Shown in pieces: positions 1 to 22,754 of a stretch of 64,000 nt of DNA. The position numbers were made by a program, and so were the translations under genes. Under the pieces are notes generated by a model, which worked only from the letters and a program-made list of their open reading frames with translations, did no database searches and was not told the origin of the DNA. The stretch's first letter is position 1; each line of letters starts with the position of its first letter. Source of the stretch: Haplodiscus bocki (lineage: Eukaryota); NCBI GenBank assembly GCA_965655095.1, contig OZ296650.1, forward strand, positions 134,230,001-134,294,000, given 5' to 3'.

Positions 1-640
1 CTTATTGAAATAAAGCATTACCAGATTGCTTCCCCTGAAATAACGTTTTATGTAACTTAGATTCAACTTCATTTGTTGAAGTCAAGAAACTGCCGATTGT
101 TTTATTTCTCTTGAATTGCTATCATTGTCTGTGCACTGATTTGTTTAATTTCGAAAAGGTTTTCTTTCGTGTTAGAGTGGTTTTCACGAAAGAGAAATTT
201 TTATCCTGAATTAACACGTTTCAATTCCCTATAGTCTTTTCATTTACATTCACAGCCGTTAATGATGCGTGAAAGTTCGTTGAAAAATGTAATTGTGAGC
301 AAACATAAACGTCATTCACTGATGACTGAACTTTGAAACTGTTGACACGTGAAAAAAAGTTGAAAGAAGTCAGTTCCGCCTTTTGCGTGGCATCACGTAA
401 AGGAACATGTAACTTTTTTCAATAGAAAACTAGCAAGAAGTTTTTTATCAAACCTTTTAATGTATACTAGCGATTCTCACTGTGACGTGGAAATTTACTG
501 AAGTTGTATTTGATCATGTTGAACTTCATCTTCCTTGTTTTAATTTTTGAGAGTAATTAGTTCTGCGTCCTGAATAGGTTGACGAAATGTCACTGTGTAA
601 ACCGCGTTGTATAAGATGATGCTTGAAAAGATTGTTCCAG

Positions 641-1654
641 ATGATGACCACCCGTGTAAATACGGCCCAAATAACTGCTCCCAATTTCTTGCGCAACAGT
701 GAGAACACATATATCCGAGGTGTTGTTTTGGTTTTTAAAAAATTTGATCGTCCCCTACAGTTATTTCGACCGCAAGCTGTAAAAGCTAAACGAATGAGCC
801 CTGACACAAACTACGATCGCCTAATCATCATCGGCGAAATCGAAACGCGAGAATGTTTTGCAATAATAGCAGATTCTGCGCAGAAAAGTTCACTCCTTTT
901 TGCTGACCGAAAACTAACTATTGGTGCCATCGTTGATGTGAAAGAAGCTATTTTTTCCAACTCCTGCCTTGGTAACGATCGAACTAATCCAATTTTTAAT
1001 GTGTCTCTTCCTTTAGAGGTAGTTACAGACGACCCGCCAATGGAGCCTATTCCTATCGATTTGAATCCCTCGACGAGTGCAATGTTTCACTTCTGTCTCC
1101 CAAACCGACCCCTTTCGTTTTTGCACGCAATTCCTGTGTTTCCGACTTGTTCCGGTTTTTTGTGCGACAGAAGAAATAGAAAAAACGAAAGCATTTGCGC
1201 ATGTTTGCAAAAATCGACTTTGTCAGCGTGGGTCATGTCAGCAAGGGTAATTAGTCAGGACATATTGAGCGAAGACGATGATCCTCTAACAGGGGATGTT
1301 CTGCAAAGTTTGTCATTGACCAAACTTTTTTGTGAGGAGGCTATCATTAGATCGGCATACACATCAATTGACAGGGGACTTTTGAGAGACGCTGTCATGC
1401 GTGTTGCTAACCATGTTAATAGCAATGGTGGGTGGAGAGTGTCAGGCTTCTATAAAACTGCTTTAACAGAAGAAAACATTGCGCAAAATGTTCAAAGGGT
1501 AAGAATTTGTCGAATCACTCCAGCGATTGAGATCCCTGTGCACTTGAAATACAATGTGATTCCTTGGATTGGAGACAATACAAACCAGCCACCACGCCTT
1601 CTTCACGCTAACGCAAATTTGCCAGCAACTAACAATGTAAACAACATGAGATGA
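641..1654 (+). CDS. Element accessory protein, ~337 aa, probable OB-fold/Zn ssDNA-binding (RPA-like) protein; intact
   Basis: ORF 623..1654; the first ATG is at 641, directly after a ttccag acceptor-like site. Homologous to the ORFs at 17585, 22088, 35329 and 49939. Beta-rich N-terminal half (IRGVVLV, YDRLIIIG, LTIGAIVDV) and a CSGxxCDRR..CAC Cys cluster. The coding call is strong; the OB-fold call is inference. Confidence 0.75.
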   Translation: MMTTRVNTAQITAPNFLRNSENTYIRGVVLVFKKFDRPLQLFRPQAVKAKRMSPDTNYDRLIIIGEIETRECFAIIADSAQKSSLLFADRKLTIGAIVDVKEAIFSNSCLGNDRTNPIFNVSLPLEVVTDDPPMEPIPIDLNPSTSAMFHFCLPNRPLSFLHAIPVFPTCSGFLCDRRNRKNESICACLQKSTLSAWVMSARVISQDILSEDDDPLTGDVLQSLSLTKLFCEEAIIRSAYTSIDRGLLRDAVMRVANHVNSNGGWRVSGFYKTALTEENIAQNVQRVRICRITPAIEIPVHLKYNVIPWIGDNTNQPPRLLHANANLPATNNVNNMR

Positions 1655-2419
1655 ACGATTAATTGAAGCAACAAAACTCAAAGAAATGTTATGTCAATCA
1701 CTGTTGTGACATTTTTTACTACAGCTAAAAATTACCTATAGAATCAAGAGAGGTATTACAGACAAGTAAAACAATGTGCCAGTAATCATTTAGCAAACTA
1801 CCGAATGTTGCTTCCATGCAACATCGACTGTTACAAGGCATTCGACCGTAAGGTGTTTGCCCAAAATTAGGAGTTCATTTGGCGTTAAAGAAAATGAGAG
1901 TTGTCGTAAAGTGGATTTATTTTACGTGCATCAAAATGAACTGTCAATTGTTGCTACCATTCATTTGCAGTTAAATTGAGAGTTTACTTTGTTTCACTGG
2001 ACATTTTTATTTATCACAGTTTAAATTGTTTTCTGTAGTTGGTACATATAATGTTCATTAAAAATTAAATGGATCATCTAGAGAAACGTTTGTGTGCAGC
2101 TCCTTACAACTAATTACCTCAAACCTAATCCGTTGTCCACTGAGACAAAAAAGTTGCTACAGTTATGTAACTATAACATAATTTTCGCAAATTATTTTAC
2201 AAATAATTCGGCATTGGAAGAAAAAAAAGATAAGATTTTTTCAAAAATAAATTGGCCCAGAATAAAACTTGTGTCACCAACAGTTTGCCAGCCCAGTAGT
2301 TTACTACGAAATTTCAGCAAAGCTTGATTGCCGCCCCTTCAAAAAGTTGACGGATTTCAGATAGATCAATTAGAAAAACTGACTTTTTTAGCAGGTTTTT
2401 CTTTTTTCTTCGACAAAAA

Positions 2420-2927
2420 ATCGTCATAACCGTCATTATTTTCGGCAATTTGGCCAAAACATTTTTTCGCTGCAAAATTATTTTTCTTTTGATACAGGTC
2501 CCGTCACGTTGTGACGAATGCTCACATCACTTTTTTAACATCAACCTGGGAGAAATGACAAAATGCTCGATTTTGGCCTCTTTTTGACAAATTTGAAAGG
2601 TCATATCTCCTAGGGCAAAAGGCCCTGGCCAAAAATTTTTGGCATGTAGGTAGTTAACAGCAAATGTGCTTCACACAAAAAATTTGGGTCCAATGCTATG
2701 GGTAAAGTGTGGAGATATTGCGGGAAAAACATCGAAACCTGCCAAAAAACAGGATCATTGCGTCATATCTCCCCAACCAAAAGAAAAAAAATGATGTAAG
2801 TGCCAAAAATCTTCATACATCGGCGGACTCTATCCACATGCAAAGTTTCATCAAAATCGTATGGTTAGGTTTCGAGATCGTCTCCTTTTCGGCGGGTTGA
2901 GTGTAAGTGTAAACTTGATTTTTGAAA
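2420..2927 (+). repeat. Subterminal module of unit 0 (degenerate ~162-bp repeats, CGTCA-rich)
   Basis: Nearly identical to 19345-19855. Shares blocks (cgtcataaccgtcatt, gcttcacac, tgtggagat, gatcatt(g/c)cgtcata) with 34240-34681, 47575-48124 and 60915-61450. GTCATATCTC occurs at 2600 and 2762. Confidence 0.75.
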
Positions 2928-3025
2928 CTCGGCACAGGGGCCCCTCCCCCGCCTCGTAACAGTTTTGTGTCGCTAAAAAGCTTGACCACCCAGTGGAGGC
3001 AACGGTGAAATTTACTAGATGGCGG
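2928..3025 (+). other. Inter-element junction motif J1 (CTCGGC, GC hairpin, GCCTCG, then core TGACCACCCAGTGGAGGC, N14, CTAG)
   Basis: Core at 2983-3000 and CTAG at 3015-3018. The same architecture recurs at 19912, 48175, 61505, 62561 and 63615. Confidence 0.85.
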
Positions 3026-4149
3026 GTTTTTTTGCTTTCAATTTTTTTCCGGTATCAATTCTGGTGATTGGTTCGAAGTTCTAAATTTTTGTTTATATAA
3101 TTGAAAACTGTTGTTTGTTCTTTTTTTACGATACTTTTCTCCAGGCTGAAGATTAACTCGCACAGTGCAGATGCAACTGATACGCACAGAGTTCATCTCA
3201 CACCGTAAATGTGGGGTTGTTCCTCAAAACCTAGTAAATTTCCTGTTTTTTTAAAGTTCATGACAGCAGCAATGAAGTATGGCAAACGTACTTTCCGGTC
3301 GATTTTTTCCCGAAGTCAGCTCAGAACAGTAAAGTAACAATTTTTCCACTTTATCAGCTGCTGAATTAAAATATAACTCCACAGACCTACCCGTTACCGG
3401 CTTCCATAACAATGGAAGTTTTCAGTTCTGTTCCGTTCCATTTCTTGAATCCACTTTTTTCAAAGAAATCTTTTGGTTGCGTAATGAGTCATGTACTTGA
3501 AGCATTTCTTGCTGGTTCTCGTTGCCTTCTTTTGTGCTTCAGAGGAACAATATAGGTGTTGTGTGCTATTTCACATCAGTTGATTTTTTCAAAAAATGAA
3601 AATGTACAGTTAGGTGTTCTGTACTAGACAAATTTATGAAAAAGAAGTTCTGCGCCATGACATTTCATCCACTATGTAACAATATTGTTCATGCGTCGTC
3701 CAAAACATATATAGAATGCTGGATGCTTCCGGAAAATAAAAACATGAGAAAAAGTTACTGGTCATAATCATCATTGAATTGAGACAGTTGTGTTCATAAA
3801 ATAATCGTCAACCATAAATTATGACAAGATGAAGGCCAATTTGATGGCGGATCAGTACTGATGTCGATTAAATATCTGCCTTCCATTTATGAAGTCGTGA
3901 AAGCAGTACTTCGATTCTCTACATTTTGAGCTTTCGTCAACATGAAATGTGGTTAGTGGAAGCAACTTTAACAATATGTGGAGGTAACGTGTAGAGTTAA
4001 AACGATGCTTCTCTACTGTTGATGTCGGTTTTGAGTGTTTCCGATTTTGAAGATTTTACTGCTCTACAGACCGTTCAAAAATTGTTTGCGTTTCACAAAT
4101 TCTTATATCTGAGTTTTTCGGAAGAATATATCTGGTTGGTTTTGAAGCC

Positions 4150-5330
4150 TACTTATCGGAGTTTTGAACTTCTTTCAAAATAAGTTTTGATTTTTCTGTG
4201 AAAAAATGCTTCTCGTTGTCAAAATAAAATATCCGCCGTTGAGCGAAATATGGCAACGTGTTATTCCTCTGAACTCATGCCGAAGTTAGTTTTTGGATAA
4301 AGTGTTTTGATATGGAATCATTATTTCTTTAGCGTCAACTCGACATTGCCAATTTCCCATCCCTCATTTGAACCCTCTGAAATAGATACTTTTCTCATGT
4401 CATTCGATCGTTTGAACTTTTCATATTGTGAATCGTGACTCACTGAAGTCTCAACTGACTATGGTCAACATCGTATGGCTTCTGTCGACAAATTGAGCCA
4501 ATTGTTTTGGGTAATTTTTTTAAATGACGTTTTCGTACACGAAGAATGCTGGATATTGTTTGTAACAATCGTTGCCTGAGTACTAGGTGTTCTTCCACAA
4601 TTTCTGAATTGCAAAGGGGAACTCCGCTGTTATCATCGTACATGAATTGCTAATGTTACTCATGAAGCATGAGAAACGTAAGAAAAATTGAAAAGTGTAC
4701 AACATAATCGTAACTTTAAATTTATACCGATGGATCCCAAAGATGATTGGCATTGAACGAACAGGGTCAACGGGCTCCTCAAATTTGAGCATGTTAATGG
4801 TTTTGCTACGGAGGAGAAATTGTTTTCATTAATTTTTTACCCATCTACCGCCTAAAAGCTACAGAGTGTTAACGTGCATGTTCGCAGAACTACATTACCT
4901 ATAGGTTTCTGACAAACTTGTTATTGTGTGCGCTATTTCATCGTGTTTTTGCTGGCATTGAAAGTTCTTCATGTTTGTGTTTCCTGTGAGGTTCGTTTCA
5001 TTTTCTATGTGAACAAACCAATCAATCGTTTTTACCATTGTTGGAACGAAATTCAAGATCGAATAACCATAATTCATATCATATTTTCAATAGTTTTGAC
5101 CGCAAAAAATTGCCTTCTCCGACGACATTGTTTGGATTCGGACGCGCTTTGTGCAGATATTACCGAAAAAGCTGCGGAAAATACTTATTGATGAAAAGTA
5201 CTGCCTCAACATTTATAGCAAACTGTGTGTTATCTTTGGCATGGAAGTACCACGCATCTGACTGTGGATCAACTTTGGGACGCACTTATCAGAAAACGAT
5301 TTCTCTTTGACGGCAATTTCAATAACTTTC
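4150..5330 (-). pseudogene. Possible decayed spliced gene, divergent from RepHel A; product unknown
   Basis: Chain of short minus-strand ORFs (4895..5077, 4583..4792, 4440..4643) near donor-like (gtaatg, gtgagt) and acceptor-like (ttttag, tttcag) sites, with stop-interrupted protein-like frames. No recognisable motif. Confidence 0.25.
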
Positions 5331-6765
5331 GGTAAATACTGAATGTTTACATTCTTCAGTTGTTCAAATGAAACTTTGACAAGGTTTAATTGTTAACATG
5401 TTTTTTTGCGGGGGAAAAAGACGGCCTCTTGCTGTTTCTTGTTTCAAACTTTCAAAAATCCCATCTGTTTTGTACAATAATCAATTTGAATGTTTTATTT
5501 TTAGCATATACATAATCGCTGTCGACATTATTGACTGATATTTTATTGATCAACCGCTGCTCTGAGCAATTGTTTTCTCAACTAAATCACCCGGTTTTTT
5601 CAGATTTCATAATTTCCTTATAATGCAATGATTTTGGAAGCCAAGATTTCCCCAAGAGAAAAACAAGATGGTGAGAATCTTTCAAACATAGTTCTCTAAT
5701 TTGTTAGGCTTTCCGGTTTTCTACATGATGACGTTTTTTTGTGGTATCATTTTTCACGTCATGTCAGACTTCAGTCATAAACAAAAGGGCATAATTTCAG
5801 TTTGCCTGAATTAGTAGTAAGATCTCAGAAAAACTTTATTTTTTCTCCATTTCTTGCCTCCACATTTTTCATGATTACTCTTTTCGTGTTAACTTGCAGC
5901 CCTGCTAAAGTGCACACTTTTCCGAAACACCTTTGGAAATTCGTATGAGTTCGCTCAACACTCATGCGTTCTCAGTTGGTTTTTCCAACTGAACCTTGTT
6001 GGCTTCTAAGAACAATTGTGATGTGCATTGTAGTCTCTTTCACTGAGGATTGGGGAAAAAACTTTCGAATTCAACGAACTCGCCGTGTACACTACTAATT
6101 GACGGGAGTCCGTAACATCGGGATGCGTTCCACTTGTATGGGTGAACGGAAAATAAATTCTTATATACGATTTTCAAACAACACAAGATTCGCAATTAAC
6201 ACTCATTACATCGCCGCCTCTACGAGTAAATACCTGTTTGTTTTCTTTCTCTGATGAATGCCTTGGTTTTGCTTCGTTAACTGCGCAAAACCAAGGCCCA
6301 CATTGCATATATTTTTCTGGATACTGCTTTTTTCGAATTCATTAGATGCTACCGTTAATTGAACAGTTTGAAAGTTTTGTACGTTGGTCCTATAGTGGCG
6401 CCCACTCTTTACAATGTATTCACTATTGAAGATGAGTTATTGATAAACTTTTGCGCGAAGTTTCTTGTGAAAGAGTAATGCCATCTGGCAAGAATGATTT
6501 GAAAAGACGTCGCTGTGCAAAATGTGGACGCTTCAGTGAACGTAATCACTCCTGTCCAAATAACACCGACAATGTTTCTTCAACTAGCGAACCATTAGGA
6601 ATTTTGTACAGTATACCTGACAGTAATTTGCTGGTCTCCTCTGTTGATGCCCTGCACTTAGAATCAACGTTGGAAGCGATGGGACTATCCTGTTCCCCAA
6701 CAAGCGGCATAATTGGGAATAAAACTAACATTCGCCTCAGTTCTGTTCAACCCTCGCACAGTCTT

Positions 6766-7175
6766 TCTATAACGGGTGATGGTAATTGTCTTTTCACTGC
6801 CCTGGGCGTTGCCCTCGGTTTTTCTCATGAAAGTGGTCATGATTTGAGGAAACTTATTGTGAGTAACATGGACTCGGTGACTTTTCCGGAAAACAGTTTG
6901 CAAACCTCAATCTATTCCGCTGAGTTCCCCAACCAGAACAAACTTCTCACGAGCCCAACTGTCAACCACTACCTGCAGACATCGCGAATGGCAGAAAATG
7001 GAGTTTTTGGCACTTGTGTGGAAATTTATACCTTTTGTCAAATTTTTAATTTGGACGTTTATGTATACCACAATATTTTGAAAAGTTGGTTCGTTTACAA
7101 ATGCGACTGCTCAAATGACAGACAAGGAGTTTTCATTCAACAAACGCGAACTGGAGATCACTTTGAGGTAATTAG
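6766..7175 (+). other. OTU-like cysteine protease domain
   Basis: ITGDGNCLFTAL (catalytic Cys box), FGTCVEIY and GDHFEVI (His box). The same motifs occur in C, D and E. Confidence 0.85.
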
Positions 7176-10100
7176 TGGCTTGACCGAAACATGCCACACT
7201 TCATTACTCCTATCAGAAGATTTAGCTGGTTCGAGTAGTCAATGTGGAAATTCAGCAATGAATACTGACTGCCACGTAATCCAGACAGCACTTGAAGCAC
7301 TTGATGAAACTGAGCCCTTGCAGAAGCGCAGACGGACTTCAGATTATCCAGTCGGCACACATTTGATCGACATTGGAGAAACTAATACAGCTGTGACATC
7401 TTTTTGTTTGGCGGAAGCTCTTTGTGGTGCAGAAAATACTACAACGCAAAATGGAGGCCGTCCTCCAACTGCTGTGGAACATCGACAACATCAATTTCAC
7501 AGATTGCCTGGAGGTGAGTTGACTGATGAGATTTTCCTGAAATTAACTGAAAACTTTGTACCACCACCGAAATCGACTGAAGAATCAACCGTTGAAATCG
7601 AGTCAAAATTGGTTGTGACAGATACTGTCGATGCTGCCAACATTTGTTGCAAGTGCATGCGTCAAGCCACGGTATATTTTCCGTTCGACATTAAGGCCTA
7701 CAGCAAAGTTGGATTGGTTAATAGAAAGTTCGGCAAAAAGCTGAAAAACGAAAATGTACATCTGTGTTGTTTCTGTTATAACTATTGTACTGCACCAAAG
7801 GTTAACTGGCAAATGGCTTGGCCAGCTGTTTTTTTCACGCTCCTTTCTGATACTTCCAGACCCGAAGCTTCTTTAGTCGCTATTTGCTCGCTGTTACCCC
7901 TGGAAATAAGGCAACATTGGCTAGGGGTAATTACCCTTTTCCCTATCTGCATCCAGCGTGTTTTAAATCGGCCGCGTATTCTTGGCACTTGTACTGTTGA
8001 TGGAACACAGAGATTGAAACGTTTCGAGCAACTAATGAGAACAATGAGACAAAAAGAAATGGCTGAAGCTTTGGACTTGGAACCGTATCCAAACATACGT
8101 TGCCCTTCTGGTTGTTGGACGTTTATCGAAGATCCTGGGTACATACCAGCGCAGCATTTTATAAACTTGATCGACAGAACTTTCACATCATTCCAAGCGT
8201 CTGCATTCAAAAAACTCAGAGGCGCCAGACTCGACTTTTTGCGCCCTTTGATGTGTTTAAAAACGTTTCTAGTGGCTGCCACAGTGCGGTTACATGAGAA
8301 AGAAGGTTTGGTTGTGCAAACTTGTTGTGCGCATGACAGGGGATGTGCGTTACAGTTCTTGCATCCCCCCAGGCATCCGGAGCTGGGACGAATTCCAACT
8401 TTGTTTGAGGAACGATTAGCCATTGCATCACCTTCATTGTCGTTTGTGAGTAGCTTAAAGGCTAATTATGCTAGCCACAACTATCAACTGTTTCGGAGCG
8501 TTGGGTCTTATAGTGGTATGAGTACTGTTTCATTGAGACGTAAACGGCGTTGGAACATCACTAGCAACCGTTTGTTCCAAGCTGAAGGAACTGTCATGTT
8601 TTTCAGGTCAGATATTCCCATTTTAATTAGACAATGGGTTGTTGAAGGTAAATTGATTGAAGATGTCGCCACTGATCTCTCTCAATATCAGCCGGAAAAT
8701 GAAAAAATGGCGGAGCATGTCGGCGTAGATCTTGACACCTGCATTCGATTGACGAAGGTGATGGACAAAAACGAACAAGAACTTTTGAGTAATGTGAAAT
8801 TTCTTCAGTGCTACGCTTTGGCTCAACCAAACAATGAACATGGTTGCTCACCTCCTCCTCTGATCAATGATACTGGCGATACACTCTGGTTTCTTCAAGC
8901 AGCATGCTGCATATCTCCATTTTTATGTTCATCCATGGTGTCTGGCGTTAATCACGTTTTCGCAACAAATTTGTTTTCACTGTTGCGTCATACATTTGCT
9001 GGGTTTGGAAAAGAAAGCAAGTTGCAGCGTACTTCACAAGCTCAAGCTGACATTGACAGTATATTGAATAACGCGGCGAATAACAATGACAAGCCAAACA
9101 TGATTTCAAACTTTTTTCAGGAGGGTGGCGTGGTGTTGCACGCATTATGTGCTGACTTATGCCATCTGCAGTTGAGCCAAAGAAAAGAATTAACTGAGAA
9201 AATTCTGCGCGACGTAACCGTGGATACGAAACACGTGATCGCTACAACAACTGATGTAAACAATCTGAGGAACAAGGTCAACCCACCTCTCAACGTCGTC
9301 CTATTTGATGTCCCATTTGAGCTTGTGGGATGTGGTTGTGGTTCTCGGGGTACAGATGCTGTAATTTTGCTTCGGCACGGTGGTCGCTTCTGCAATTTTT
9401 GGCGTATAGTGAAAGCTAACAAGTTTGCTGAACCTTTGTTGGACTCACCTGAGACCTTACTAGAAAAAATTCTACGAGGCTACTGGACTTTTTTAATCTA
9501 CCGAGGAACTAACTCTAAAAAGGTGTCGACTGTAAAGTGGCACTATCTTAGTAATTTAACCGGTCAAGGAATTTTCATTTGTGACAAACATGATGTTCCG
9601 TTAACGAGGGACTTCCGACGTAGCAACTACTTCTGTCGATGTGGAAGGTCATCATTCCTCAGATGTGCCTACTCAAAATGCAACAGTTGTGTGTGTAAGA
9701 AACACTTCGACGAGGGAATGAAACATCCAAACTTACGAGTTTTAGTTCGACCTACAGCAGAACAAAAATTAACGCCTGAAAAACCGACCGCTGAAGCTGC
9801 AATCATTGCTACACAGTGTGAACTGAATTCCAACTTAGGTAGTTTATGTGAGCAGGACAAAAGCGTTGTTGAACCAGATCTATCCATCAACTGTTCCAGT
9901 CAAAACTCAAGTTCATCATCAATAGCTTCTTTTTTGTGCAACAACATGAACGCAAACTCGATCAGCGAAAGTGAATTGGCGATGAATAAATTGAACGTGT
10001 GTTCCGGTGAAAGGGCCATTGTTGCTGTACAAGAGGCTTTCAGAGAAGAAGACTACAATATTCCTCTCCACATACTGTTGAATTCTCGATGCAACTTACT

Positions 10101-10584
10101 GTACAGGAAAAAAAGTCATCCCATTTCCCTGACCGTTAAGGAGAAACGTTTCATGGAAAACATTACAGCTTCTTCAACATCATCAACGCCTTTGCTTCAA
10201 CCGGAAGGGCTGCTTTTTCCTTCTATTTTCTGGTGCCAAAGTTCCGATGGCAGCATTGAAGGAGCAATTCCAATATCCCTTTTCCAATCCGAGAAATACA
10301 ACAAACAAGTGGGGTTTGCAGGGTTAGAGAACATGCTACGAACTCGCATCACTGATGGGTCGCTTTTAACCTCCAGTCACACATCATATCTTCAGTTCGT
10401 TTTTGACTGTCTTTTAAACTTACAACTGAGTAAAACTGATATTCGAATTGTGTTGAACAGAGGCTGGCAAGAATTGGGCAGTACGCCTACTAATTACCAG
10501 TACTTTTCCAATGAAACGTTCAAGTTTGATTGTGCAGAATCCCGGAAAAATGTGTGCGAAGTAGCAGCACTCATTAGAGATAAA

Positions 10585-11390
10585 AACCCCACTTATTTTG
10601 TAACATACACATGTGGGCAATCTACTCACCCTGGCTTGCGGAAAATTTTTCAGGCTATTGACAAACTTTACCCGCCCGATATGACATCCAAAGAACTGAG
10701 ATTATCTGTAATACAAAGTGAATTAATGCCTATGCTTAGATGTTGGCATCGCGCCTCACAGTATGTAATGCAATGGTTGAAATGTTCGGCCGAGCAACCT
10801 TTGGGACCAATCTCTCACTTATGGATGAGATACGAGTGGCAAGACGAAACTTCGGCCTTTCCACACATCCATGCACTAGTGTGTACCGGAGAAAACAAGT
10901 TTGGTCCGGAAGTTCAATCCCGAGTCTGCTGTTCAAAAGAAACATTCATGGGCGCCTTAAGCAAATGCTGTCCAGCGTTATCGGATAGCGAACGGTTCCG
11001 GTTGGGAGAACTTTTCCAAAAATACCAACGGCACGATTGTGGCAAGGGAAAAAATAGATGTAAAAAAAACTGATTGGTTAGGAAAACCAGTGTGTAGAGT
11101 GCCCAAATATCCTGCATCAGTTGGGTTCTCTTTTAAAGAAATACAACCTAATTACTCGAAAGAAACTTGGGACTTGTTGAGAAGCATGAAATTGTCCTAT
11201 ATTGACCCTAACTCTTCAACAGACAAAGTTGAAGAAGAACTTAAAGCTGGAAAACATCACTACCCTGCTGCTTACAAGGAACACATGTCACCAACAAATG
11301 CTGCGTTGTTTGCTTTCACGGAAAGCAGTACGAACGTCCAAATTTGTGACGACGAAATGTGTTCACGATACGTTGCAAAGTATGCTGCCG
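10585..11390 (+). other. HUH (Y2) Rep domain
   Basis: Motif 1 YFVTYTC (10594), motif 2 RYEWQ...FPHIHAL (HIH at 10864-10872) and motif 3 YVAKY (11369-11383). Confidence 0.9.
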
Positions 11391-12779
11391 GTGTGGAAGG
11401 TCGGGCGTTCACAAAGATATTAGCCTCTGCTGGTGAGAATGAAGTGAAAGTCCAAACAGAACCTATTGTGAACGAAAAAATCGCCGGAGTCCAAACCAGC
11501 ATTACCAAAAAACGTCAGGATGATGATAAACGCAAATCTGTAACGGGCAGAATTGTTAGCATAACTGTATGCTTGTGGTGGGCTTTGCAGTTGCCGTACG
11601 TTTGCACAAACATAGATTTCATTCATGTACCAACAGTTCCCAAAGAGTTCAGATCAGGAATAGTGATTGAAAAAAAAATTGCGAGCACCATGAACTTCAG
11701 TGCTGTTTTTGCCGAAGCTGTTCGAATTCGGAATTTCTGAAGCTTCCAAAACATCGACAATTAACAAAAAATCAAGAATTGTTGTTGGCAGATGTGGAAG
11801 CGAGTTCAATTACGCCTGACAAAGTGACCATTTTTGGCCTGAGACCACCGGAGCTTCTGTTTGTCAGCAGTTTGAAAAGTTATTTCAGTTGGTTCGTTAG
11901 ATTCAAATACAACATTTCGAAAGGGAAAAGTAGTCATGAGATTTTGTTGAGCCGTGCATCGTGTAATGAGTTTTGGGTTGATTGCCTTGGATACGTAATC
12001 AAGATACGCCCACCCGCTATCTTTGATTTTCTTGATTTTTGTGCAACAAGAAGTGGTAACCCGAGGGACGAATTTTTGAAAGAGGAGTGCCGCAAACACA
12101 TTGTCCCCAAATTGCAAGGAGCCAACAGTTGCCCCAGACTAGTGGCGTACAATCTTTGTTTCTCAGATCAAAAAGCCATAGTGGTTTTCACAAATACTCT
12201 GCCCAGTAGTCCAACAAAGTTCTTGTTGCACTTTGTGCTAACATTTGGTTCGTTTGACACCGAACTGGACATTCTCTGTTTCATCTCTCGGGGAATCTTT
12301 TGTAGCTGCCAAACTGGTGGAGCGTAACAACATTACTGTATCAGTCGTCCGTCTACTAGCTCGCCGGTACCTTTTGCAACAGCTCCGCTTTGTGCCAGGA
12401 TCCTCTAAACTCATAGACAAGTTTTTGTTGATGGCAAACAGCGTTCTAGGAGAAGCACTGTTAGAAAACAATTTGTATTTTGCATCCGGGGTACCAGCTG
12501 TCTTAGATCGCACTTTTTCTGCCGACTCCGAAGAAAATATTGCTGTAGATTTGACAATGAACAAGAGTAGATTGGTGGAGTTCTTACACACATGTCAAAT
12601 GGGACTTCCAAGCGAAGAAAGTATGATAGATGCTTCTGTAACTGCACCCGTTGCATGGAAACCCGACTTTGGTAGACATCCTAGCCAGAGAGTGAAGTCG
12701 TACTGTGAACAGACTAAGATTTTGAAACATTTAGTTGAAATCGTGGACTTGTACAGAGGAGGAACACAAAATTTCGTCA

Positions 12780-14070
12780 GACATCAAATCATTGCAGGGG
12801 CACCAGGAACGGGAAAAACGTTCATCATGTTGAGAGCTCTGAGTTATGCAATAAGTCAAGGACTCAATTGCATGGTAACTTCGCTGGCGGCCGAAAGGTC
12901 GGCTGCTTTAGCTGGCAAGCATCTGAACGCTCTCATTCCTTTCCCGGTGGAAAAAAATGGAACTGTTAATTCTTTGTCTCGAGTAGCTTTGTCCAGCTTG
13001 CAGAAATCACCGGACAAAAGTCGGTTACTCCAGAATTTGGATGTATTGTTCGTTGAAGAGATTTCGATGATCTCTAGTGAACTTTGGGCGGCCACGGACC
13101 ACGTTTTCCAAATCATCTGCTCGAACTACGTGCCATTTGCTGGGAAACTAATCATTGCCACAGGAGATTTTTTTCAACTTCCTCCACCAAAAGGAAGTTG
13201 TCTGATCAGTTCTTCATTCCCTTTAACAACTTTTCATTTTAGTTTCCTCCAACACTTTGTGCGTATGCAAAATGAAACAGGTCAGAAAGTTTTGTCACTC
13301 ATGTCAACTTTTCCCAGAACAACTGCCATGGGAAAGCAAATTTGGAATTTGATCGAGCGAAATTGCAATTTCGTAGAATGTTGGGATGACGTACCAAATG
13401 ATGCAATTCGAATTTTTGCTACTCGCAAAGCAGAAAGATATGCGACGTTGAAAAAAATTAATCAAGTGAAAGACAGTGGTTCCCAGTTCCATGAAAGTTC
13501 ATCGACAGATGAAATGTGCGTGTCAAGTACGGACAACTGGATAGAAGCTTCTGGAGCGGTAACAAAGTTTCTAAACAAGAAATGTTTGGAGCCACAATCG
13601 TTGTTTCTGTTCCTCGGAGCAATTCTCCGACTCACCGTGAACAAGCCAAATGTGATGGCTTTCCAAGGACAACTCTGTGTTTTGGTCTCCCTGGACTCAT
13701 TGGCTGACAACGGAACAGTAACTGTTGCCTTGGCACCTGCTGGTTGCCGATCTATTCCACCAGTCTCTGTAATACGAAGTACCTGGAGATGTATTGTCCT
13801 TGCAAAAGAAATTGGAGTGAACATTCGTCTAAACCACAGGACTATTTGTCGCAGAATCCAATTCCCCCTCAAATTGTACGTGGCGTCAACTATTCATAAA
13901 ACTATGGGCGAAACACTCCCAACAGTTGCTACGCAGATTGTTGGAGCTCAAGAGTTTTCTCTTTGGCTGCCGGAGCAACTATACGTAGTAATGAGTCGTG
14001 TTCGATCACTGGCGGATATCACTTTCGTGGGATCGAAGCAGTCCAACGAAGGAGCCATCCTGAGTTTGCT
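12780..14070 (+). other. PIF1-like SF1B helicase domain
   Basis: GAPGTGKT (12797-12820), VEEISM, GDFFQLPP, QFPLKLYVASTIHK and QLYVVMSRV. Confidence 0.9.
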
Positions 14071-14194
14071 GAGTAAAAAGTCACAGTGGTCGGAGCTGAG
14101 TACCGAAATCCTCCAGAAGTGTTCTTCCCGTGACCCAACGATCTTCCATGGTGCTACAAACCCTTTTCCATCAACCATCAGTATACCGCAGGAG

Positions 14195-14440
14195 ATTGTT
14201 GGCTACTGTTACCTTATTCAGAGCGTCCCCCAAAACAACTTGTTATATATTGGTTCAACAATGTGCCTCAATCGACGAATTCGTGAACATAATGTTGGCT
14301 TGGGAGCATCATTCACACAGGATCCCTCTCGAAGACCTTGGGTTTTGTGTGCTTATGTGACCGGCTTTCTTGCAAGCAGCTCAACGGATCGAATAAGGTT
14401 TTTTGAAAAACAGTGGCTTGAGGCAGTTACTAAAGTGCTT
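14195..14440 (+). other. GIY-YIG endonuclease domain (SLX1/UPF0213-like)
   Basis: GYCYLI...YIGST..LNRRIREHN.G.GASFT...RRPWVL..YVTGF...FEKQW. Confidence 0.85.
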
Positions 14441-15496
14441 AACTTGAGGAAGAAGAACGTCTCCCTCCCGAATGCATTGTCAACAGCAGAAAACTTAATC
14501 ATAAATTGGCCTCATAAAGAAGATGTCTTGAAATTGGTAGCTTGCTGTAATCAGCCCATATTACCTTAGTACCTTAGAGAAACACTCACAAACTACTTAT
14601 CAAATGATTCGTCGACTGTGAAATGTGACCAAGTGAATGCCTTCTCACAAAAAAACTTGAAGTTCATTATTTAATCAACACCTGAAGTGAATATTTAAAC
14701 GTCCAACGTATATCTTCAATTTGTCCGGTGGTTTCGAGAGGTGCACGTATGAAGTTTTTCGTATGTGTGTTTTTGCTTTTTGTTGCGTTTAAAGAACGCT
14801 GAATTTGTTAATTCTAAATGTTGTTTCTCTTGCTAATTACAACAATTCAATTGTTCGATTTGTGATGTCTTTGAGAGTAGTCTGCAGAATATTTAGCCAA
14901 CGTACTCTTTTCCATTGAGCTTAACGTTTAAGTAAGTTTAATACAAAACTTTCTCGACATTATTCATTTGCGGAAAAGAATTTGCTGCACTTTTCCATGC
15001 TGCACTTTGCTGCACAACATGCTTTTTGGAACCTTAAAATAGGTACATTAGGTTTTCATAAACTGCACCTTAACAATGAACGTTCCTGATTGCCCACTGT
15101 ATTTAAAGTTGATTGATTACTAAATTTAACTTTTTGCACTGCATTTTTAGCGTATGCTTGTCGAACACTTTCTTTTTTGTTTGTCCTAATAACGATATAC
15201 TCCCAGATAATGTATGATAAAAGCCCTGTACTTCTTCTTGTTTCGACCGCAAGGTGAAACACTTGGTAAAACGTTAATTCTATACCAAAAAGCAGACATA
15301 CTCAAATGAGCAAATAAATATTTAGAGCTTCTGGAACAAAGTTATTTTCAGCTCTTGCGTTTTATACTCCAACATAATGCTAATGACAGTTGTTTTGTGT
15401 GTTCCATCATAGTGTACCTATGCTGTTGGAATCATTATTTGTCGTTTTTTTTGTCTTCGCCCCTTGTCGTTGCTTTTCAATGTTCTGCAGATCGAA

Positions 15497-16261
15497 ATGA
15501 AACATCTTATCATAGCTGATTCTCTTGGAAGAAGACTTGCCAGGAAGCACGAAAACCTGGAAGTGAAGTTCTTCCCTGGTGCCACGGCATCTTGCCGTGG
15601 GGTAATTGACTGTTTAAGAAACCTAACAACGTTTTATGAATCAATCATTCTGTTCATCGGGGGAAATGGACTTACAAGCCGGGGCAGACAACGGGGAAAG
15701 AGTCCTGAGCAAGTGAGTAATTTATTCAACACAATGTCAAATTGCTTGCGACTGAAAACGTTTTAGAAAAATACTGGTTGCAACATCAGGGTGCATTGTG
15801 TATGAGTCGATACGCGGGCAATATTTCCCTGCGAAAACATTTTCCAATTAATGACCAGAGCTTCAAATGCAACTGAAAGTATTTTCTTTTTATTTTCTCC
15901 AAAATTTGAAGAAAGTTGAACAAAATCAGACGAAGTGCATCTTCAGCTAAAAAAATTTGTTAACTCTTAGGTGGTTCGAGACATTATGTACCTCGTGCGT
16001 CTGGCCACTCCAATGTGTTACAGAGTATACTGTCTGGCTCTAGTCATGAGATCCGAACCTTGCTTCCTAGATATCAAAAGGGTGAACGATGGACTCAGAA
16101 ACTCTTCGAGTCAATACAATTTTGTGTCGGTTGCTAGCAAAATGAGCTCCGAGAGGAATTTGATGGATGGTTTGCATTTATCTCGTCACGGTGTTTCCAA
16201 CTTGATGTACATTCTAAAGAAAAGAGTTTTGGGTACTGTACTACGTTTTTCTGACCTGTGA
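15497..16261 (+). CDS. SGNH/GDSL hydrolase-like protein, 168 aa, two exons (15497-15712, 15971-16261)
   Basis: A phase-0 intron (gtgagt at 15713 to cttag at 15970) joins two ORFs in frame. Blocks IIADSL, FPGAT, IGGNGL and DGLHLS match SGNH blocks I, II, III and V. Confidence 0.8.
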
Positions 16262-17584
16262 TAAGTACAAGTAACAAAACCTTCGTGAAGTAGTTGTTGA
16301 TTAATGAACGCAGTCTCTAACATGGTACCCTGTGTTTGATTTTTTGGTAATGGCGTGTTTGTTCCCTTTCCTCGTTCTTTTATTTCAAATTATGAAAGTT
16401 GACTGGAAAATTGTCATAATGTGGCCGACAAAATTCTGATCAATTGTAACTGTTTAATGCCCACTGTTTTAACAGAGCGTCGCAGAATACGTACACCTGC
16501 TCATTGTCGACTGGGGTTCTGAAAGCAATCACATCCTTTTGCAGCTGAAAGAGAGAAAAAAGTGTAGTGGTAAACTTGGACGACCAATGTTATGAAGGCT
16601 TCTTTCAGTAAATTCGATTAAACAGATATTCCTATTTTATCATGCAGCAAACAAATGGGACTTATTGGTTGTTTTACTGTGCATACAATTGGAATCGACT
16701 TTAAAGTGATCTGAGTTTTTAGTTTTTGTAACTTCTTAACAAAGTTAAATGATTTTCTTGAATAAATGTCGGTGTATTTCGTGAAAACTTTGAATTTGGC
16801 ATGTTGTGTTGTTTTTTTCTGTATGTTAGTTTCTTTCAGTTACGTTTTTCCATAAACTTTGAATACTGCTAAACCTATGATTGTTGCTCTTTGCTCAGCA
16901 TTGACTTTATGCCTGTTGTTTTTTTGTAGCTAATTGAACTTCTCATTGAAATGAAACATTCCACAGATTACTTGCCTTGAAATATTGTTTTACGTAGCTT
17001 CAAGCTAACTTCATTTGTTTAAGTCAAAAAATGCCGATTGTTTCATTTCTTTTGAATTGCTCTCATTGTCTGTGCAATGAATTGTTTTTTTTAAAAAAAA
17101 CTTTTTCTTTCATGTTAGACTGGTTGTCATATAAAAGAACATTTTTATCCTGAATTAACACGTTTTCAATCCGTATACTCTTTTCATTTGCATTTACAGC
17201 CATTAATATTCAGTGAAAGTTCATTGAAGATTGTAATTGTGACCAAACATACTCCTCATTCACTAAAGACTGAACTTTCAGACCGTTGAAACGTGAAAAA
17301 ATGTTGAAAGAAGTCAGTTGCACCATTTGCGTGGCATCACTTAAAGGAACATGTAAATTTTTTCAATAGAAAAATAGCAAGAACTTTTCTATCAAACATT
17401 TTAATGTATACTAACGATACTCACTGTGACGTGGAATTTTAATGAAATTGTATTTGATCATGTTGAACTTCATCTTGTTTGTTTTAAATTTTGAGAAAAA
17501 TTAGTTCTGCGTCCTGGATAGGTTGACAAAATGTCACTGTGTAAACCGCGTTGTATAAGATGATGCTTGAAGAGATTGTTCCAG

Positions 17585-18597
17585 ATGATGACCACCCGTG
17601 TAAATACGGCCCAAATAACTGCTCCCAATTTCTTGCGCAACAGTGAGAACACATATATCCGAGGTGTTGTTTTGGTTTTTAAAAAATTTGATCGTCCCCT
17701 ACAGTTATTTCGACCGCAAGCTGTAAAAGCTAAAAGAATGACCCCTGACACAAACTATGATCGCCTAATCATCATCGGCGAAATCCAGACGCGAGAATGC
17801 TTTGCAATAATAGCAGATTCTGCGCAGAAAAGTTCACTCCTTTTTGCTGACCGAAAATTAACTATTGGTGCCATCGTTGATGTGAAAGAAGCTATTTTTT
17901 CCAACTCCTGCCTTGGTAACGATCGAACCAATCAATTTTCAACGTGTCTCTTCCGTTAGAGGTAGTTACCGACGACCTGCCAATGGAGCCTATTCCTATC
18001 GATTTGAATCCCTCGACGGGTGCAATGTTCCACTTCTGTCTCCCACACCGACCCCTTTCGTTTTTGCACGCTATTCCTGTGTTTCCGACTTGTTCCGGTT
18101 TTTTGTGCGACAGAAGAAATAGAAAAAACGAAAGCATTTGTGCATGTTTGCAAAAATCAACTTTGTCAGCATGGGTCATGTCAGCAAGGGTAGTTAGTCA
18201 GGACATACTGAACGAAGACGATGATCCTCTAACAGGTGATATTCTGCAAAGTTTGTCATTGACCAAACTTTTTTGTGAGGAAGCTATCATTAGATCGGCA
18301 TACACATCAATTGACAGGGGACTTTTGAGAGAAGCTGTCATGCGTGTTGCTAACCATGTTAATAACAATGGTGGGTGGAGAGTGTCAGGCTTCTACAAAA
18401 CTGCTTTAACAGAAGAAAACATTGCGCAAAATGTTCAAAGGGTGAGAATTTGTCGAATCACTCCAGCGATTGAGATCCCTGTGAACTTGAAGTACAATGT
18501 GATTCCTTGGAATGGAGATGATACAAACCAGCCACCACAACTTTTTCACGCTAACGCAAATTTGCCGGCAAGTAACAATGCAAACAACATGAGATGA
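17585..18597 (+). pseudogene. OB-like accessory gene of element A, 1-nt deletion at ~17932
   Basis: ORFs 17567..17959 and 17944..18597 together are nearly identical to 641..1654; aatcc has become aatc. Confidence 0.85.
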
Positions 18598-19344
18598 ACA
18601 CTTAATTGAACCAACAAAACTCAAACAAATCTTATGTCAATCACTGTTGTGATAATTTTTACTACAGTTACAAATACTTGATTACCAGTTCAACACAGGT
18701 ATTAGAGACATTTAAAACAAGGTGCAATGAATCATTCAGCAAGCTACCGAAAGTTGTTTGCATGCAACATCGACTGTCACAAGGCATTCGACCGTAAGGT
18801 GTTTGCCCAAAACTAATAGATCAATTGTCGTTAAAGAAAATGAGAGTTGTCATGAAGTGGATTTGTTTTATGTGCATCCAATTGAACTTACAAGGGTTGC
18901 TACCATTCAAGATACTTAGATTTCACTTTGTATTACTGGTCAACTTTATTTAGCACAGTTTATGTTGTTTTCTGTAGTTGATACGTATAATGTTCATTAA
19001 AAATTAAATGGGTCATTCAGGAAAAGTTTGTGTGCAGCTCTTTATAACTAATCACCTCAAATCTAATTCAATGTCCACTGAGACAGAAAATTTGCTACAG
19101 TTTTGTATAATTTTAACATAATTTTGAAAATTTCTGTTACAAATAATTCGGAATTGAAAGAAAAAACTGCAACGAGTTTTTATGAATTGGCCCAAGTAAA
19201 AATTTTGCGTCACCGACATTTTCCCAGCCCAATAGTTCAGTACAAACTTTCAGCAATGCTTGATTCCCGCCTTCAGAATGTTGACGGATTTCAGATGAAG
19301 TAGAGAAACTGACCTTTTACCTGGTTTTTCTTCTTCCACGAAAA

Positions 19345-19855
19345 ATCGTCATAACCGTCATTATTTTCGGCAATTTGACCAAAACTGTTTTTTTTTGTCG
19401 AAAAATTATCTTTCATTTGACACAGGTCCCGTCACGTTTTGACGAAAGCTTACATCACTTTTTTAACATCAAATTGGGAGAAATGACAAAATGATCGATT
19501 TTGGCCTATTTTTGACAAATTTGAAAGGTCATATCTCCTAGGGTAAAAGGCCCAGGCCAAAAATTTTTGGCATGTAGGTAGTTGACAACAATTGTGCTTC
19601 ACACAAAAAAATTGGGTCCGATGCTATGGTTAAAGTGTGGAGATATTGCGAAAAAAACATCGAAACCTGCCAAAAAACAGGATCATTGCGTCATATCTCC
19701 CCAACCAAAAGAAAACAAATGATGTAAGTGCCAAAAAACTTCATACATCGGCGGACTCAATCCACATGCATAGTTTGATCAAAATCGTATGGTTAGGTTT
19801 CGAGATCGTGTTTTCTGCGGGTGGGTGCGGGTAAGTGTAAACTTGATTTTTGAAG
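19345..19855 (+). repeat. Subterminal module of element A
   Basis: Near-copy of 2420-2927. Confidence 0.75.
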
Positions 19856-19955
19856 CTCGGCACAGGGCCCCTCCCCCGCCTCGCAATACTGTTTTGTGGA
19901 GCTTAAGAGCGTGACCACCCAGTGGAGGCAAAGGTACCGTTCGCTAGAAAGGCCC
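19856..19955 (+). other. Junction motif J2 (A | C)
   Basis: Core TGACCACCCAGTGGAGGC at 19912-19929 and CTAG at 19944-19947. Similarity to the J1 flank ends here. Confidence 0.85.
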
Positions 19956-22088: not shown

Positions 22089-22754
22089 TTCTTAAAGAAT
22101 GCAAATTGATATATTCCAAACAAGAAAGTACACGATAAAAAAGACATGTCAAGTTTTGCAGTCTGATTTATTTTAAACGAAAAAACTCCCTATGAAGAAA
22201 GAAAAATTTTTGAAGAAAGAAAACTTGAGAAAATCCGTTTCTTTTATCAAAGCCTAGCAACTCTTCACTGCCGTCTATGGTACACTTTATGTGGAACGAA
22301 CTGAATCTGCAGCCATTTACCGGGTGTGTCCTCAAAACAGTTTTCCACTCCAAGGCAAAAAATAGTCGCACACTGAAAACCATATAAATTGAAACACAGA
22401 TAGTACATTAAACTCGACTTCCTCTCAACTAATTCTATTTCCAAAAACAAAACAGTTTACAACAGATTCCAGTAATAAAAAGTGCATGCGAAAAAGTTGT
22501 AAACAAAATGCCAAAAAAGCGTTCAGCATCAAATAACTTCATCAAAAGTAGAAACATACTTCAACTAAATCAAAGGAAGATCGCCAATTCATTATTCACA
22601 TTCATAAACCATATGGCAGCACAAATAGTGCAATTAAACAATAAAACCAAGTCAAGATAGAAATGACCGCATTACAAATGTTCACGTGGTGTTAAAACAC
22701 CGACGGACTTCCTAATCATCAAGTTATCTTCATGGAGCTCGCGGTAATTGATGC

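What the first reader, a model, noticed from the sequence alone, without database searches (positions are those of the whole stretch)
2928..3025. Near-invariant structured junction core TGACCACCCAGTGGAGGC, a candidate origin/nick site
Six copies (2983, 19912, 48175, 61505, 62561, 63615) each differ by at most one base, while the flanks of different families barely align. Shared architecture: CTCGGC, a GGG/CCC hairpin, GCCTCG, a ~25-nt spacer, the core (CCAC/GTGG mini-hairpin; GAGGC can pair with the upstream GCCTC), then exactly 14 nt to CYAG. In J3-J6 the CCAG.GGAGGC motif is directly repeated. Sequence left of the core tends to track the upstream family and sequence right of it the downstream unit, which would put the crossover in or near the core. 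The exact position is unresolved.
Basis: partly seen in the sequence, partly recalled or inferred. Interest (0 to 1): 0.8.

Follow-up and report, generated by a model that had tools for sequence, protein, structure and literature searches.

The report
Helitron-like end-to-end junction site
The 18-base "core" is where the conserved 3' end of one rolling-circle (Helitron-like) transposon unit abuts the conserved 5' start of the next in a mixed head-to-tail array. It is a real and informative junction, but of a kind already known for Helitrons.

Summary
In detail: six + strand copies of the 18-mer against 0.05 expected by chance.

**What the window is.** It is one head-to-tail array of Helitron-like units. 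The encoded protein has OTU, HUH Rep, PIF1 helicase and GIY-YIG domains. The units are an A tail, a full A, a rearranged B pair, C, and three 1.05-kb non-coding S units.

**What the core is.** I collected 38 such ends from the window and 15 related contigs, which appear to come from stony corals.
- Core bases 1-8, plus two upstream hairpins and a ~600-bp module, travel with the upstream unit. This is an ordinary Helitron-type 3' end.
- Bases 12-18 travel with one class of downstream 5' starts.
- Tails and heads assort freely. Three near-identical A copies sit between different neighbours.

**Where the switch lies.** Base 9 follows the downstream partner in all 38 ends. It is C in 24/24 junctions with TGGAGGC-type heads, T in 13/14 others, and G in one truncated unit, where the G comes from the downstream sequence. 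The switch therefore maps between bases 8 and 9, or at most 8 to 12.

**Mechanism (inferred).** The core is the Rep nick-and-join site, meaning termination of one unit and initiation of the next. Resident 3' ends probably serve as insertion targets.

**Limits.** No free 5' end or empty site was found, so the exact bond is not proven.

**Verdict.** A new variant of a known kind.

The parts
2928..3025 (+). Junction J1 (A tail to A unit). Long imperfect hairpin HP1 at 2928-2956. Small hairpin HP2 at 2972-2981. 3' terminus TGACCACC at 2983-2990. Shared triplet CAG at 2991-2993. 5' start TGGAGGC at 2994-3000. 14-nt leader at 3001-3014. Second CTAG at 3015-3018.
19912..19929 (+). Core J2 (A unit to B unit). 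The upstream unit ends at 19919.
   Evidence: two A copies elsewhere match the window only as far as the middle of this core (BLAST endpoint 19922). By eye they are identical through base 8 and differ at base 9.
48175..48192 (+). Core J3 (B to C), one mismatch.
61505..61522 (+). Core J4 (C to short unit S1), one mismatch.
62561..62578 (+). Core J5 (S1 to S2).
63615..63632 (+). Core J6 (S2 to S3).
1..2990 (+). 3' part of an A-family unit, cut by the window start.
   Evidence: 1-3006 matches 16942-19935 at 89%.
2991..19919 (+). Complete A-family unit, 16.9 kb, coding block on the + strand.
   Evidence: 98.7-98.8% identical copies in L010 and L021 with the same bounds and different neighbours.
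6484..14470 (+). RepHel gene of unit A (OTU, Helitron-type Rep, PIF1 helicase, GIY-YIG). Broken: 3 frame changes and 1 in-frame stop relative to an intact 2672-aa relative.
19920..34682 (+). B-family unit B1: complete 5' region and body, with the 3' module cut off about 200 bp before its end. Coding block on the - strand.
34684..48182 (+). B-family unit B2: lacks the first ~1.5 kb and has a complete 3' end. It is joined to B1 without a core.
25006..32953 (-). RepHel gene of B1. Broken: 5 frame changes and 2 in-frame stops relative to intact P0030.
38265..46207 (-). RepHel gene of B2. Broken: 1 frame change and 3 in-frame stops.
48183..61512 (+). C-family unit, 13.3 kb, 61-68% identical to B, coding block on the - strand.
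52301..60005 (-). RepHel gene of C. Broken: 5 frame changes and 2 in-frame stops.
61513..64000 (+). Short non-coding S units of ~1055 bp (a ~415-bp 5' part plus the ~600-bp 3' module). There are two complete units (61513-62568 and 62569-63622) and the start of a third.
2423..2990 (+). Conserved 3' module, running from the GTCATANCCGTCAT motif to the CCACC end. The other copies are at 19348-19919, 34289-34682 (truncated), 47596-48182, 60921-61512, 61951-62568 and 63007-63622.

Best explanation
The core is a composite. It is the point where the right terminal sequence of one Helitron-like unit is joined, with no intervening base, to the left terminal sequence of the next unit.

**Anatomy.**
- The 3' end consists of a ~600-bp conserved module ending in a long G/C-rich imperfect hairpin, a small family-specific hairpin, and then TGACCACC.
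- One class of 5' starts supplies CAG-TGGAGGC, followed by a short hairpin leader and a second, similar AC-YAG site.

**Inferred mechanism.**
- The HUH Rep of these elements nicks and rejoins the + strand here, most likely between core bases 8 and 9 (..CCACC | NAG..).
- The same site would then terminate transfer of the upstream unit and start the downstream one.
- Because a resident 3' end offers the sequence the enzyme cuts, new units are inserted preferentially at such ends. This builds mixed head-to-tail arrays.
- The core is near-invariant because every family depends on related Reps.

**Shown.** The anatomy, the free assortment of tails and heads, and the position of the linkage switch.

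**Inferred.** Cleavage, its exact bond, and the targeting of resident ends.
For: **Element identity.**
- Pfam finds OTU, Helitron_like_N, PIF1 and GIY-YIG in the window ORFs.
- Intact relatives are single ORFs of 2647-2689 aa, and Helitron_like_N scores above Pfam's cut-off in two of them.
- Conserved HxH and YxxxY columns are present.

**Linkage switch.**
- Tails and heads occur in 26 or more combinations.
- Three A copies that are 98.7-98.8% identical have the same bounds but different neighbours on both sides.
- The A and X tails occur with or without bases 12-18.

**Base 9.**
- It is C in 24/24 junctions with TGGAGGC-type heads, T in 13/14 others and G in one (two false positives removed by eye).
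- In L017 a unit that is 99.8% identical to its neighbour but lacks its first 430 bp is joined as CCACC + GAG. The G matches that unit's own internal sequence.

**Conservation.**
- Core bases 5, 7, 8, 10 and 11 are invariant in all 38 ends.
- This includes families whose Rep region is only 33-36% identical and that come from other samples.

**Structure.**
- HP1 is predicted on the alignment, with compensatory changes in two pairs.
- HP2 sits at a fixed place with ten different arm sequences (shuffle test combined p = 0.0015).

**Literature.**
- Helraiser has a hairpin 11 nt before its CTAG end and forms circles with directly joined ends (PMC4778049, PMC5876387).
- Head-to-tail Helitron junctions and arrays are known (PMC5876387).
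Against: - No cleavage data exist.
- No free 5' end, array start in unique DNA, or empty site was found in 15 related contigs, so targeting of resident ends and the exact bond rest on comparison alone.
- The placement at 8|9 rests on one variable column plus a single aberrant junction. Canonical Helitrons are described as ending after CTAG, which would put the bond at 11|12.
- HP2 hairpins are short (3-5 bp) and none is significant on its own.
- The Rep assignment is by sequence only. A profile of the N-terminal ORFs did not reach Helraiser in the PDB, the AlphaFold model was poor (pLDDT 48.7), and Foldseek gave nothing significant.
- All four RepHel genes in the window are broken, so this array is not itself a source of enzyme.
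Confidence: 0.7

Rival explanations
1. Ordinary Helitron 3' end only. The element ends after CTAG/CCAG (bond at 11|12) as in canonical Helitrons. TGGAGGC is simply the first bases of one 5' end class. The C at base 9 is a variant that weakens termination, so that only such junctions persist as arrays (read-through concatemers).
For: - A hairpin followed by ~11 nt ending in CTAG matches the Helraiser layout (PMC4778049).
- AG at bases 10-11 is invariant whatever follows.
- Homologous A-A, B-B and S-S junctions exist.
Against: - Tandem short units joined through TAG persist in L011, L018 and L020, so T does not prevent arrays.
- Base 9 follows the head class within the same tail family.
- The G in the L017 junction comes from the downstream sequence.
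- Read-through cannot make junctions between different families.
Confidence: 0.2
2. The arrays were shuffled by host homologous or microhomology-mediated recombination within the conserved core and hairpin region. The element's enzyme plays no part, and the core is conserved for another reason, such as protein binding or a promoter.
For: - The core and hairpins are the only sequence shared by all families.
- Ordinary deletions do occur in the array, for example the B1/B2 joint at 34683.
Against: - The shared stretch is only 18 nt of identity plus about 40 nt of partial identity.
- Switches are never seen elsewhere in the ~600-bp module, which is 65-68% shared.
- Near-identical A copies have exact bounds in three different contexts.
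Confidence: 0.07
3. The ~1-kb short units are a host satellite or a tandem RNA gene, and the large elements are site-specific insertions into it.
For: - The S, X and Z units form 1.04-1.06-kb tandem runs.
Against: - There is no Rfam match at gathering score, none on the core at E up to 10, and no tRNA.
- Each autonomous family has its own 3' module continuous with its body, and short-unit tails match their cognate autonomous element at 82-92%. The short units are therefore head-plus-tail derivatives.
Confidence: 0.03

Closest known systems
Canonical Helitron right terminal sequence and the RTS-LTS joint of Helitron circles and tandem arrays (Helraiser/Helibat; PMC4778049, PMC5876387)
   Same: - RepHel protein with HxH and two tyrosines four residues apart.
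- A hairpin a few bases before an ~11-nt terminal stretch that ends in CTAG in 13 of 14 ends not followed by TGGAGGC.
- Ends of consecutive units joined directly.
- Non-autonomous derivatives that keep only the ends.
   Different: - The 5' start is not TC.
- The junction with the main head class reads CCAG, not CTRR.
- The linkage switch maps 3 nt inside the CTAG-like tetramer.
- A and T flanks are not seen.
- Arrays mix several families.
- The protein carries OTU and a C-terminal GIY-YIG nuclease.
Helentron / HLE2 elements and their non-autonomous HINE/DINE-1 derivatives (PMC4067079, PMC11417382)
   Same: - An OTU domain upstream of Rep and a nuclease fused after the helicase.
- The layout is similar: a short 5' motif 2-4 nt from the start (TGGAGGC after CAG), complementary to a motif about 35-40 nt from the 3' end (GCCTC), with a small palindrome 8-35 nt from the 3' end.
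- A GIY-YIG domain has been reported in one plant HLE2 family.
- Elements whose coding block is inverted relative to the end structures have been described as 'HLE2-reverse'.
   Different: - The complementarity is only 5-6 nt, not 12-16.
- The nuclease is GIY-YIG, not AP-type.
- The HLE2 marker domain DUF6570 is not detected.
- No TT flanks are seen.
IS91 / IS200-IS605 HUH transposons (named from PMC5876387; the details given here are from general knowledge)
   Same: - Single-strand HUH transposition without target duplication.
- The target sequence resembles the element's own cleavage site, so ends and targets share a short motif.
   Different: These are prokaryotic elements with no helicase fusion. 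The likeness is one of proposed mechanism only, and no homology was tested.

Membership tests
Helitron-like elements (RepHel transposons) | HUH Rep domain with two catalytic tyrosines | tested here: met
   Helitron_like_N scores 27 bits in the window's A copy, just below the 28.9 cut-off. It scores 30.5 and 32.7 bits in the intact relatives P0028 and P0030. HxH and YxxxY columns are conserved in 12 sequences. The fold test was inconclusive.
Helitron-like elements (RepHel transposons) | PIF1-type helicase downstream of Rep in the same protein | tested here: met
   PF05970 at E 4e-13. PDB PIF1 hits and Helraiser through the helicase. Single ORFs of ~2650 aa in relatives.
Canonical Helitron (HLE1) | 5' end starts with TC | tested here: not met
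   The 5' starts read CAG-TGGAGGC or TAG-....
Canonical Helitron (HLE1) | 3' end CTRR preceded by a hairpin about 10-12 nt upstream | tested here: inconclusive
   CTAG in 13/14 ends not followed by TGGAGGC, but CCAG in 24/24 junctions of the window's type. A small hairpin ends 1-4 nt before CCACC.
Canonical Helitron (HLE1) | Insertion between host A and T without target duplication | not testable with these tools
   No free end in unique DNA and no empty site among the 15 related contigs.
Helentron / HLE2 | Terminal or subterminal inverted repeats of 12-16 nt | tested here: not met
   Only GCCTC/GAGGC (5-6 nt) is complementary between the ends. GCCTCG also pairs within its own hairpin, perfectly so in family X.
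Helentron / HLE2 | [quoted passage not shown] | tested here: met
   HP2 lies between GCCTCG and the terminus in all families.
Helentron / HLE2 | Accessory domains: AP endonuclease, OTU, DUF6570 marker | tested here: inconclusive
   OTU is present. The nuclease is GIY-YIG, not AP-type. There is no DUF6570 at E up to 0.05-0.1.
Head-to-tail Helitron array / circle-type RTS-LTS joint | 3' end of one unit joined directly to the 5' end of the next, same strand | tested here: met
   All six window cores are on the + strand. 24 such joints have identical spacing.
Structured host RNA gene | Match to a curated RNA family, or occurrence independent of the elements | tested here: not met
   No Rfam match at gathering score, and none on the core at E up to 10. 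No tRNA. Of 9 metagenome hits to the 18-mer, the 2 true ones are element junctions and 7 are chance matches in GC-rich DNA.
Hairpin-loop origin of HUH replicons (nick in a hairpin loop) | Nick site in the loop of a conserved stem supported by covariation | tested here: inconclusive
   The CCAC/GTGG stem is predicted, but its columns never vary in the 18 aligned joints. It cannot form at the 14 ends with other heads.

The most novel reading that the evidence does not exclude
These coral elements are an undescribed lineage of Helitron-like transposons that integrate site-specifically at the terminus of resident copies of any related family. Their Rep would cut 3 nt inside the CTAG-like end (..CCACC | NAG..). 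Heads and tails would then behave as exchangeable cassettes, and mixed arrays would grow without ever leaving free 5' ends. Coding blocks are tolerated in either orientation.
Probability: 0.35. Interest if true: 0.7.

Novelty: new variant of a known kind. Interest (0 to 1): 0.48.

Why it matters
**Mapping the joining site.** How Helitron-like elements choose their ends and their targets is known experimentally for essentially one reconstructed element. Here nature provides a large set of joints between different families that share one end sequence. The joining site can therefore be mapped by comparison alone, to within 1-4 bases.

**Practical consequences.**
- Tools that expect TC...CTRR ends or 12-16-nt inverted repeats would miss or mis-bound these 13-17-kb elements and their 1-kb derivatives.
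- The arrays could be mistaken for satellites.

**If self-targeted insertion is confirmed.** It would be a clear case of a eukaryotic rolling-circle element that uses its own ends as a safe landing site.

Tried and rejected
**RNA genes.**
- Rfam at gathering score on the whole window, and at E up to 10 on 60800-64000, gave nothing on the core.
- ARAGORN found no tRNA.

**Collection scans for the 18-mer.**
- Viral contigs gave none.
- Metagenome contigs gave 9 hits, of which 7 are chance matches in GC-rich bacterial-like DNA.

**The 'solo' 3' ends.**
- I first read the ends in L010 and L011 as free ends.
- A profile search with nhmmer then showed further diverged 3' modules downstream.
- Two of these 'flanks' share a GC-rich hairpin segment. 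They are therefore joints to units with another kind of 5' start, not free ends.

**Free 5' starts.** None were found. All other matches to the start motif are chance one-mismatch hits without the leader.

**Rep fold.**
- A PDB profile search with the N-terminal ORFs found no Rep structure.
- The AlphaFold model of the longest uninterrupted frame covering Rep in copy B2, built with 12 rows, was poor (pLDDT 48.7).
- Foldseek gave no significant match. Helraiser came fourth at E 0.9. This test is inconclusive.

**Other checks.**
- A 14/18 core-like site inside B-type elements is at chance level and was dropped.
- Long inverted repeats between the ends were looked for by eye and not found.
- The GCCTC/GAGGC pairing cannot be tested because neither side varies.

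Full report
**1. The observation**

The 18-mer is present six times, always on the + strand, at the stated positions and with at most one mismatch. Shuffled sequence gives 0.05 matches. Reading 2700-3300 and aligning the six sites confirms the described order:
- CTCGGC, a G-run/C-run hairpin, then GCCTCG;
- a spacer of about 25 nt;
- the core;
- 14 nt, then CYAG;
- in J3-J6, a second CCAG.GGAGGC.

One statement needs correcting. The left flanks are not unalignable. A module of about 600 bp upstream of every core is shared by all families at 65-68% identity. It starts at a second conserved motif, GTCATANCCGTCAT, which has 11 matches, all on the + strand, against 0.06 expected.

**2. What the window is**

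Self-comparison resolves one head-to-tail array:
- the last 3 kb of an A unit;
- a complete A unit of 16.9 kb;
- a B pair;
- a C unit of 13.3 kb;
- three S units of 1055 bp.

The B pair is a rearranged tandem. B1 lacks the last ~200 bp of its 3' module and B2 lacks its first ~1.5 kb. They are joined at 34683 without a core. A full B unit is 15.0 kb in a related contig.

The large units encode OTU, a Helitron-type Rep, a PIF1 helicase and a GIY-YIG nuclease. Relatives with intact genes have all four domains in one ORF of 2647-2689 aa.
- Helitron_like_N passes Pfam's cut-off in two of these relatives.
- An alignment of 12 proteins has conserved HxH and YxxxY columns. This is the signature that is needed for Helraiser activity (PMC4778049).

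All four RepHel genes in the window are broken. Counts of frame changes plus in-frame stops are:

| Copy | Frame changes | In-frame stops |
|---|---|---|
| A | 3 | 1 |
| B1 | 5 | 2 |
| B2 | 1 | 3 |
| C | 5 | 2 |

These are counts only. The coding block is on the + strand in A and on the - strand in B and C, although all cores have the same orientation.

No Rfam family and no tRNA matches the core.

**3. Related sequences**

A scan of metagenome contigs for the 18-mer gave two true relatives in a Cyphastrea coral metagenome and seven chance hits. Protein word searches found relatives only in unnamed ENA and JGI assemblies. Twelve look-ups gave contigs L010-L021 from three ENA assemblies. The host is therefore probably a stony coral. 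This is an inference.

**4. Where linkage switches**

In the window plus 15 related contigs I found 38 ends of the 3' module (two false positives were removed by eye).

*Free assortment.* Tails and heads combine freely: A-A, A-B, A-Z, B-B, B-C, B-Z, C-S, S-S, S-A, X-A, X-Y, X-Z, X-D, E-Z and others, at least 26 combinations in all.

*Same unit, different neighbours.* Three A copies that are 98.7-98.8% identical sit in different surroundings:

| A copy | Left neighbour | Right neighbour |
|---|---|---|
| Window | A tail | B head |
| L010 | S tail | A different kind of head |
| L021 | A further tail type | A head |

In each case similarity to the window's A ends inside or right next to the core. 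The unit bounded by cores is therefore what has been copied to new places.

*The tail alone.* Fourteen ends carry the tail up to ..CCACC but are not followed by TGGAGGC. They are followed by TAG plus other heads, many of which have a GC-rich hairpin. These include tandem 1.2-1.3-kb units in L011, L018 and L020. The hairpins plus core bases 1-8 are thus the 3' end proper, and bases 12-18 belong to one class of heads.

*Conservation.* Core bases 5, 7, 8, 10 and 11 are invariant in all 38 ends. This holds even in families whose Rep region is 33-36% identical to A.

*Base 9.* This is the only informative column:
- C in 24/24 joints with TGGAGGC-type heads;
- T in 13/14 others;
- G in one.

Within the same tail family (A or X) it changes with the head. 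The G case is decisive in kind. In L017 a unit 99.8% identical to its neighbour lacks its first 430 bp, and the joint reads CCACC-GAG. The intact neighbour has ..C-GAG.. at the corresponding internal place, so the G came from the downstream partner.

The switch is therefore between bases 8 and 9. If base 9 is discounted, it lies somewhere between 8 and 12.

**5. Structure**

- *HP1.* Folding each tail as DNA and the alignment fold give a long imperfect hairpin. Its outer arms are G-C-(G/T)-(A/C)-G-G-C and GCCTCGC, which are perfect in family X. Its inner stem is a G run paired with a C run. Two of its pairs show compensatory changes.
- *HP2.* Between HP1 and the terminus there is a small hairpin that always ends 1-4 nt before CCACC. 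It has ten different arm sequences in ten tail types. Each alone is weak (3-5 bp), but together they beat shuffles (combined p = 0.0015).
- *Comparison with Helraiser.* The hairpin followed by about 11 nt ending in CTAG is the layout of the Helraiser right end (PMC4778049).
- *Leader.* A short hairpin whose 3' arm ends at the second AC-YAG site shows GC, AU and GU variants at one pair.

**6. Mechanism**

*Shown.*
- The core is the direct joint of a conserved 3' end and a conserved 5' start.
- Units bounded by it have been copied into different contexts.
- The joint is confined to a few bases.

*Inferred from established knowledge of HUH enzymes and Helraiser* (PMC4778049, PMC5876387).
- Rep nicks one strand at the 5' start, the helicase unwinds, and the 3' hairpin signals termination.
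- The ends are then joined directly, as in Helraiser circles.
- A joint in an array is thus both a terminator and an initiator.
- The invariance of bases on both sides of the switch fits an enzyme that reads both sides of its cut.

*Why resident ends look like targets.*
- Every 5' start seen is preceded by a 3' end.
- Whatever follows a 3' end begins with NAG.
- I therefore propose that resident 3' ends are the preferred targets. This would resemble the prokaryotic HUH elements whose target resembles their own cleavage site (general knowledge).

*Other routes to arrays.*
- Read-through can add homologous repeats but cannot explain joints between families.
- Host recombination in so short a shared stretch seems a minor route.

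**7. Comparison and novelty**

Head-to-tail Helitron junctions and arrays, and the direct RTS-LTS joint, are known (PMC5876387). Helentron/HLE2 elements with OTU and a fused nuclease are known. So are one HLE2 family with a GIY-YIG domain and 'HLE2-reverse' elements, whose end structures are inverted relative to the gene (PMC4067079, PMC11417382).

This lineage fits neither class fully:
- there is no TC start;
- CTAG appears only outside the main joint type;
- there are no 12-16-nt inverted repeats;
- DUF6570 is not detected;
- the nuclease is GIY-YIG.

I file it as a new variant of a known kind. The finding itself is a correct and useful observation whose explanation is largely ordinary.

**8. 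Limits and conduct**

- The Rep fold test failed for lack of a confident model.
- A profile HMM of aligned 3' ends was used only to detect further copies.

Noticed in passing
window 2423, 19348, 34289/34312, 47596/47619, 60921, 61951/61991, 63007/63047: A second conserved motif, GTCATANCCGTCAT, lies on the + strand about 560-610 nt upstream of every core, at the start of the shared 3' module. It occurs in one to three tandem copies (20-24-nt periods, also reported by TRF). There are 11 matches against 0.06 expected. It may be a protein-binding site.
   Followed up: partly
window 6484-14470 (+) versus 25006-32953, 38265-46207 and 52301-60005 (-); also L014, L021 (sense) and L016, L017 (antisense): The whole coding block (RepHel followed by a ~330-aa ORF) is inverted relative to the same end sequences in families B, C, F and the L017 family compared with A and D. 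This recalls the 'HLE2-reverse' elements in the HELIANO paper. GC and AT skew shift accordingly near 20 kb.
   Followed up: partly
window 34683: B1 and B2 are joined without a core. The last ~200 bp of B1's 3' module and the first ~1.5 kb of B2 are missing, which looks like an ordinary deletion across a former junction.
   Followed up: yes
L017 minus strand 8033 (junction); L017 as a whole: This is a tandem of B-type units with intact 2647-aa ORFs. One unit lacks its first 430 bp and is joined to the preceding 3' end as CCACC-GAG, with the G taken from its own internal sequence. It is the most informative aberrant joint.
   Followed up: yes
L010 17244-17350; L015 minus 2185-2080; L011 16643-20700; L018 minus 26330-25000; L020 minus 25940-22200: A second class of 5' starts follows TAG. 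They contain a GC-rich hairpin with a 4-nt loop within about 15-70 nt, and some form 1.2-1.3-kb tandem units. None was seen in the window.
   Followed up: partly
window 623-1654 (+), 17944-18597 (+), 48941-49939 (-); L010 14908-15921; L017 6308-7303: An ORF of about 330-343 aa downstream of RepHel is conserved in all families and has no Pfam match. Its function is unknown.
   Followed up: no
L014 15562-15575: One short unit has a 10-nt deletion in the leader between two CACC repeats. This brings the second ACCAG site next to the first. It is the only exception to the 14-nt spacing.
   Followed up: no
L001, L008 (JGI Ga0126343): The only true metagenome matches come from a Cyphastrea sp. coral metagenome (bioRxiv 10.1101/391565), so the window probably derives from a stony coral or a close associate. 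Contig depths of 37-128x in the ENA assemblies suggest collapsed high-copy repeats.
   Followed up: partly
L012 1-2543 and 3213-6926: A 640-bp 3' module starts abruptly after DNA unrelated to any other locus. The unit after the next core shares only ~27 nt of head with family D before becoming unique. These may be an array start and a captured or unrelated segment.
   Followed up: no
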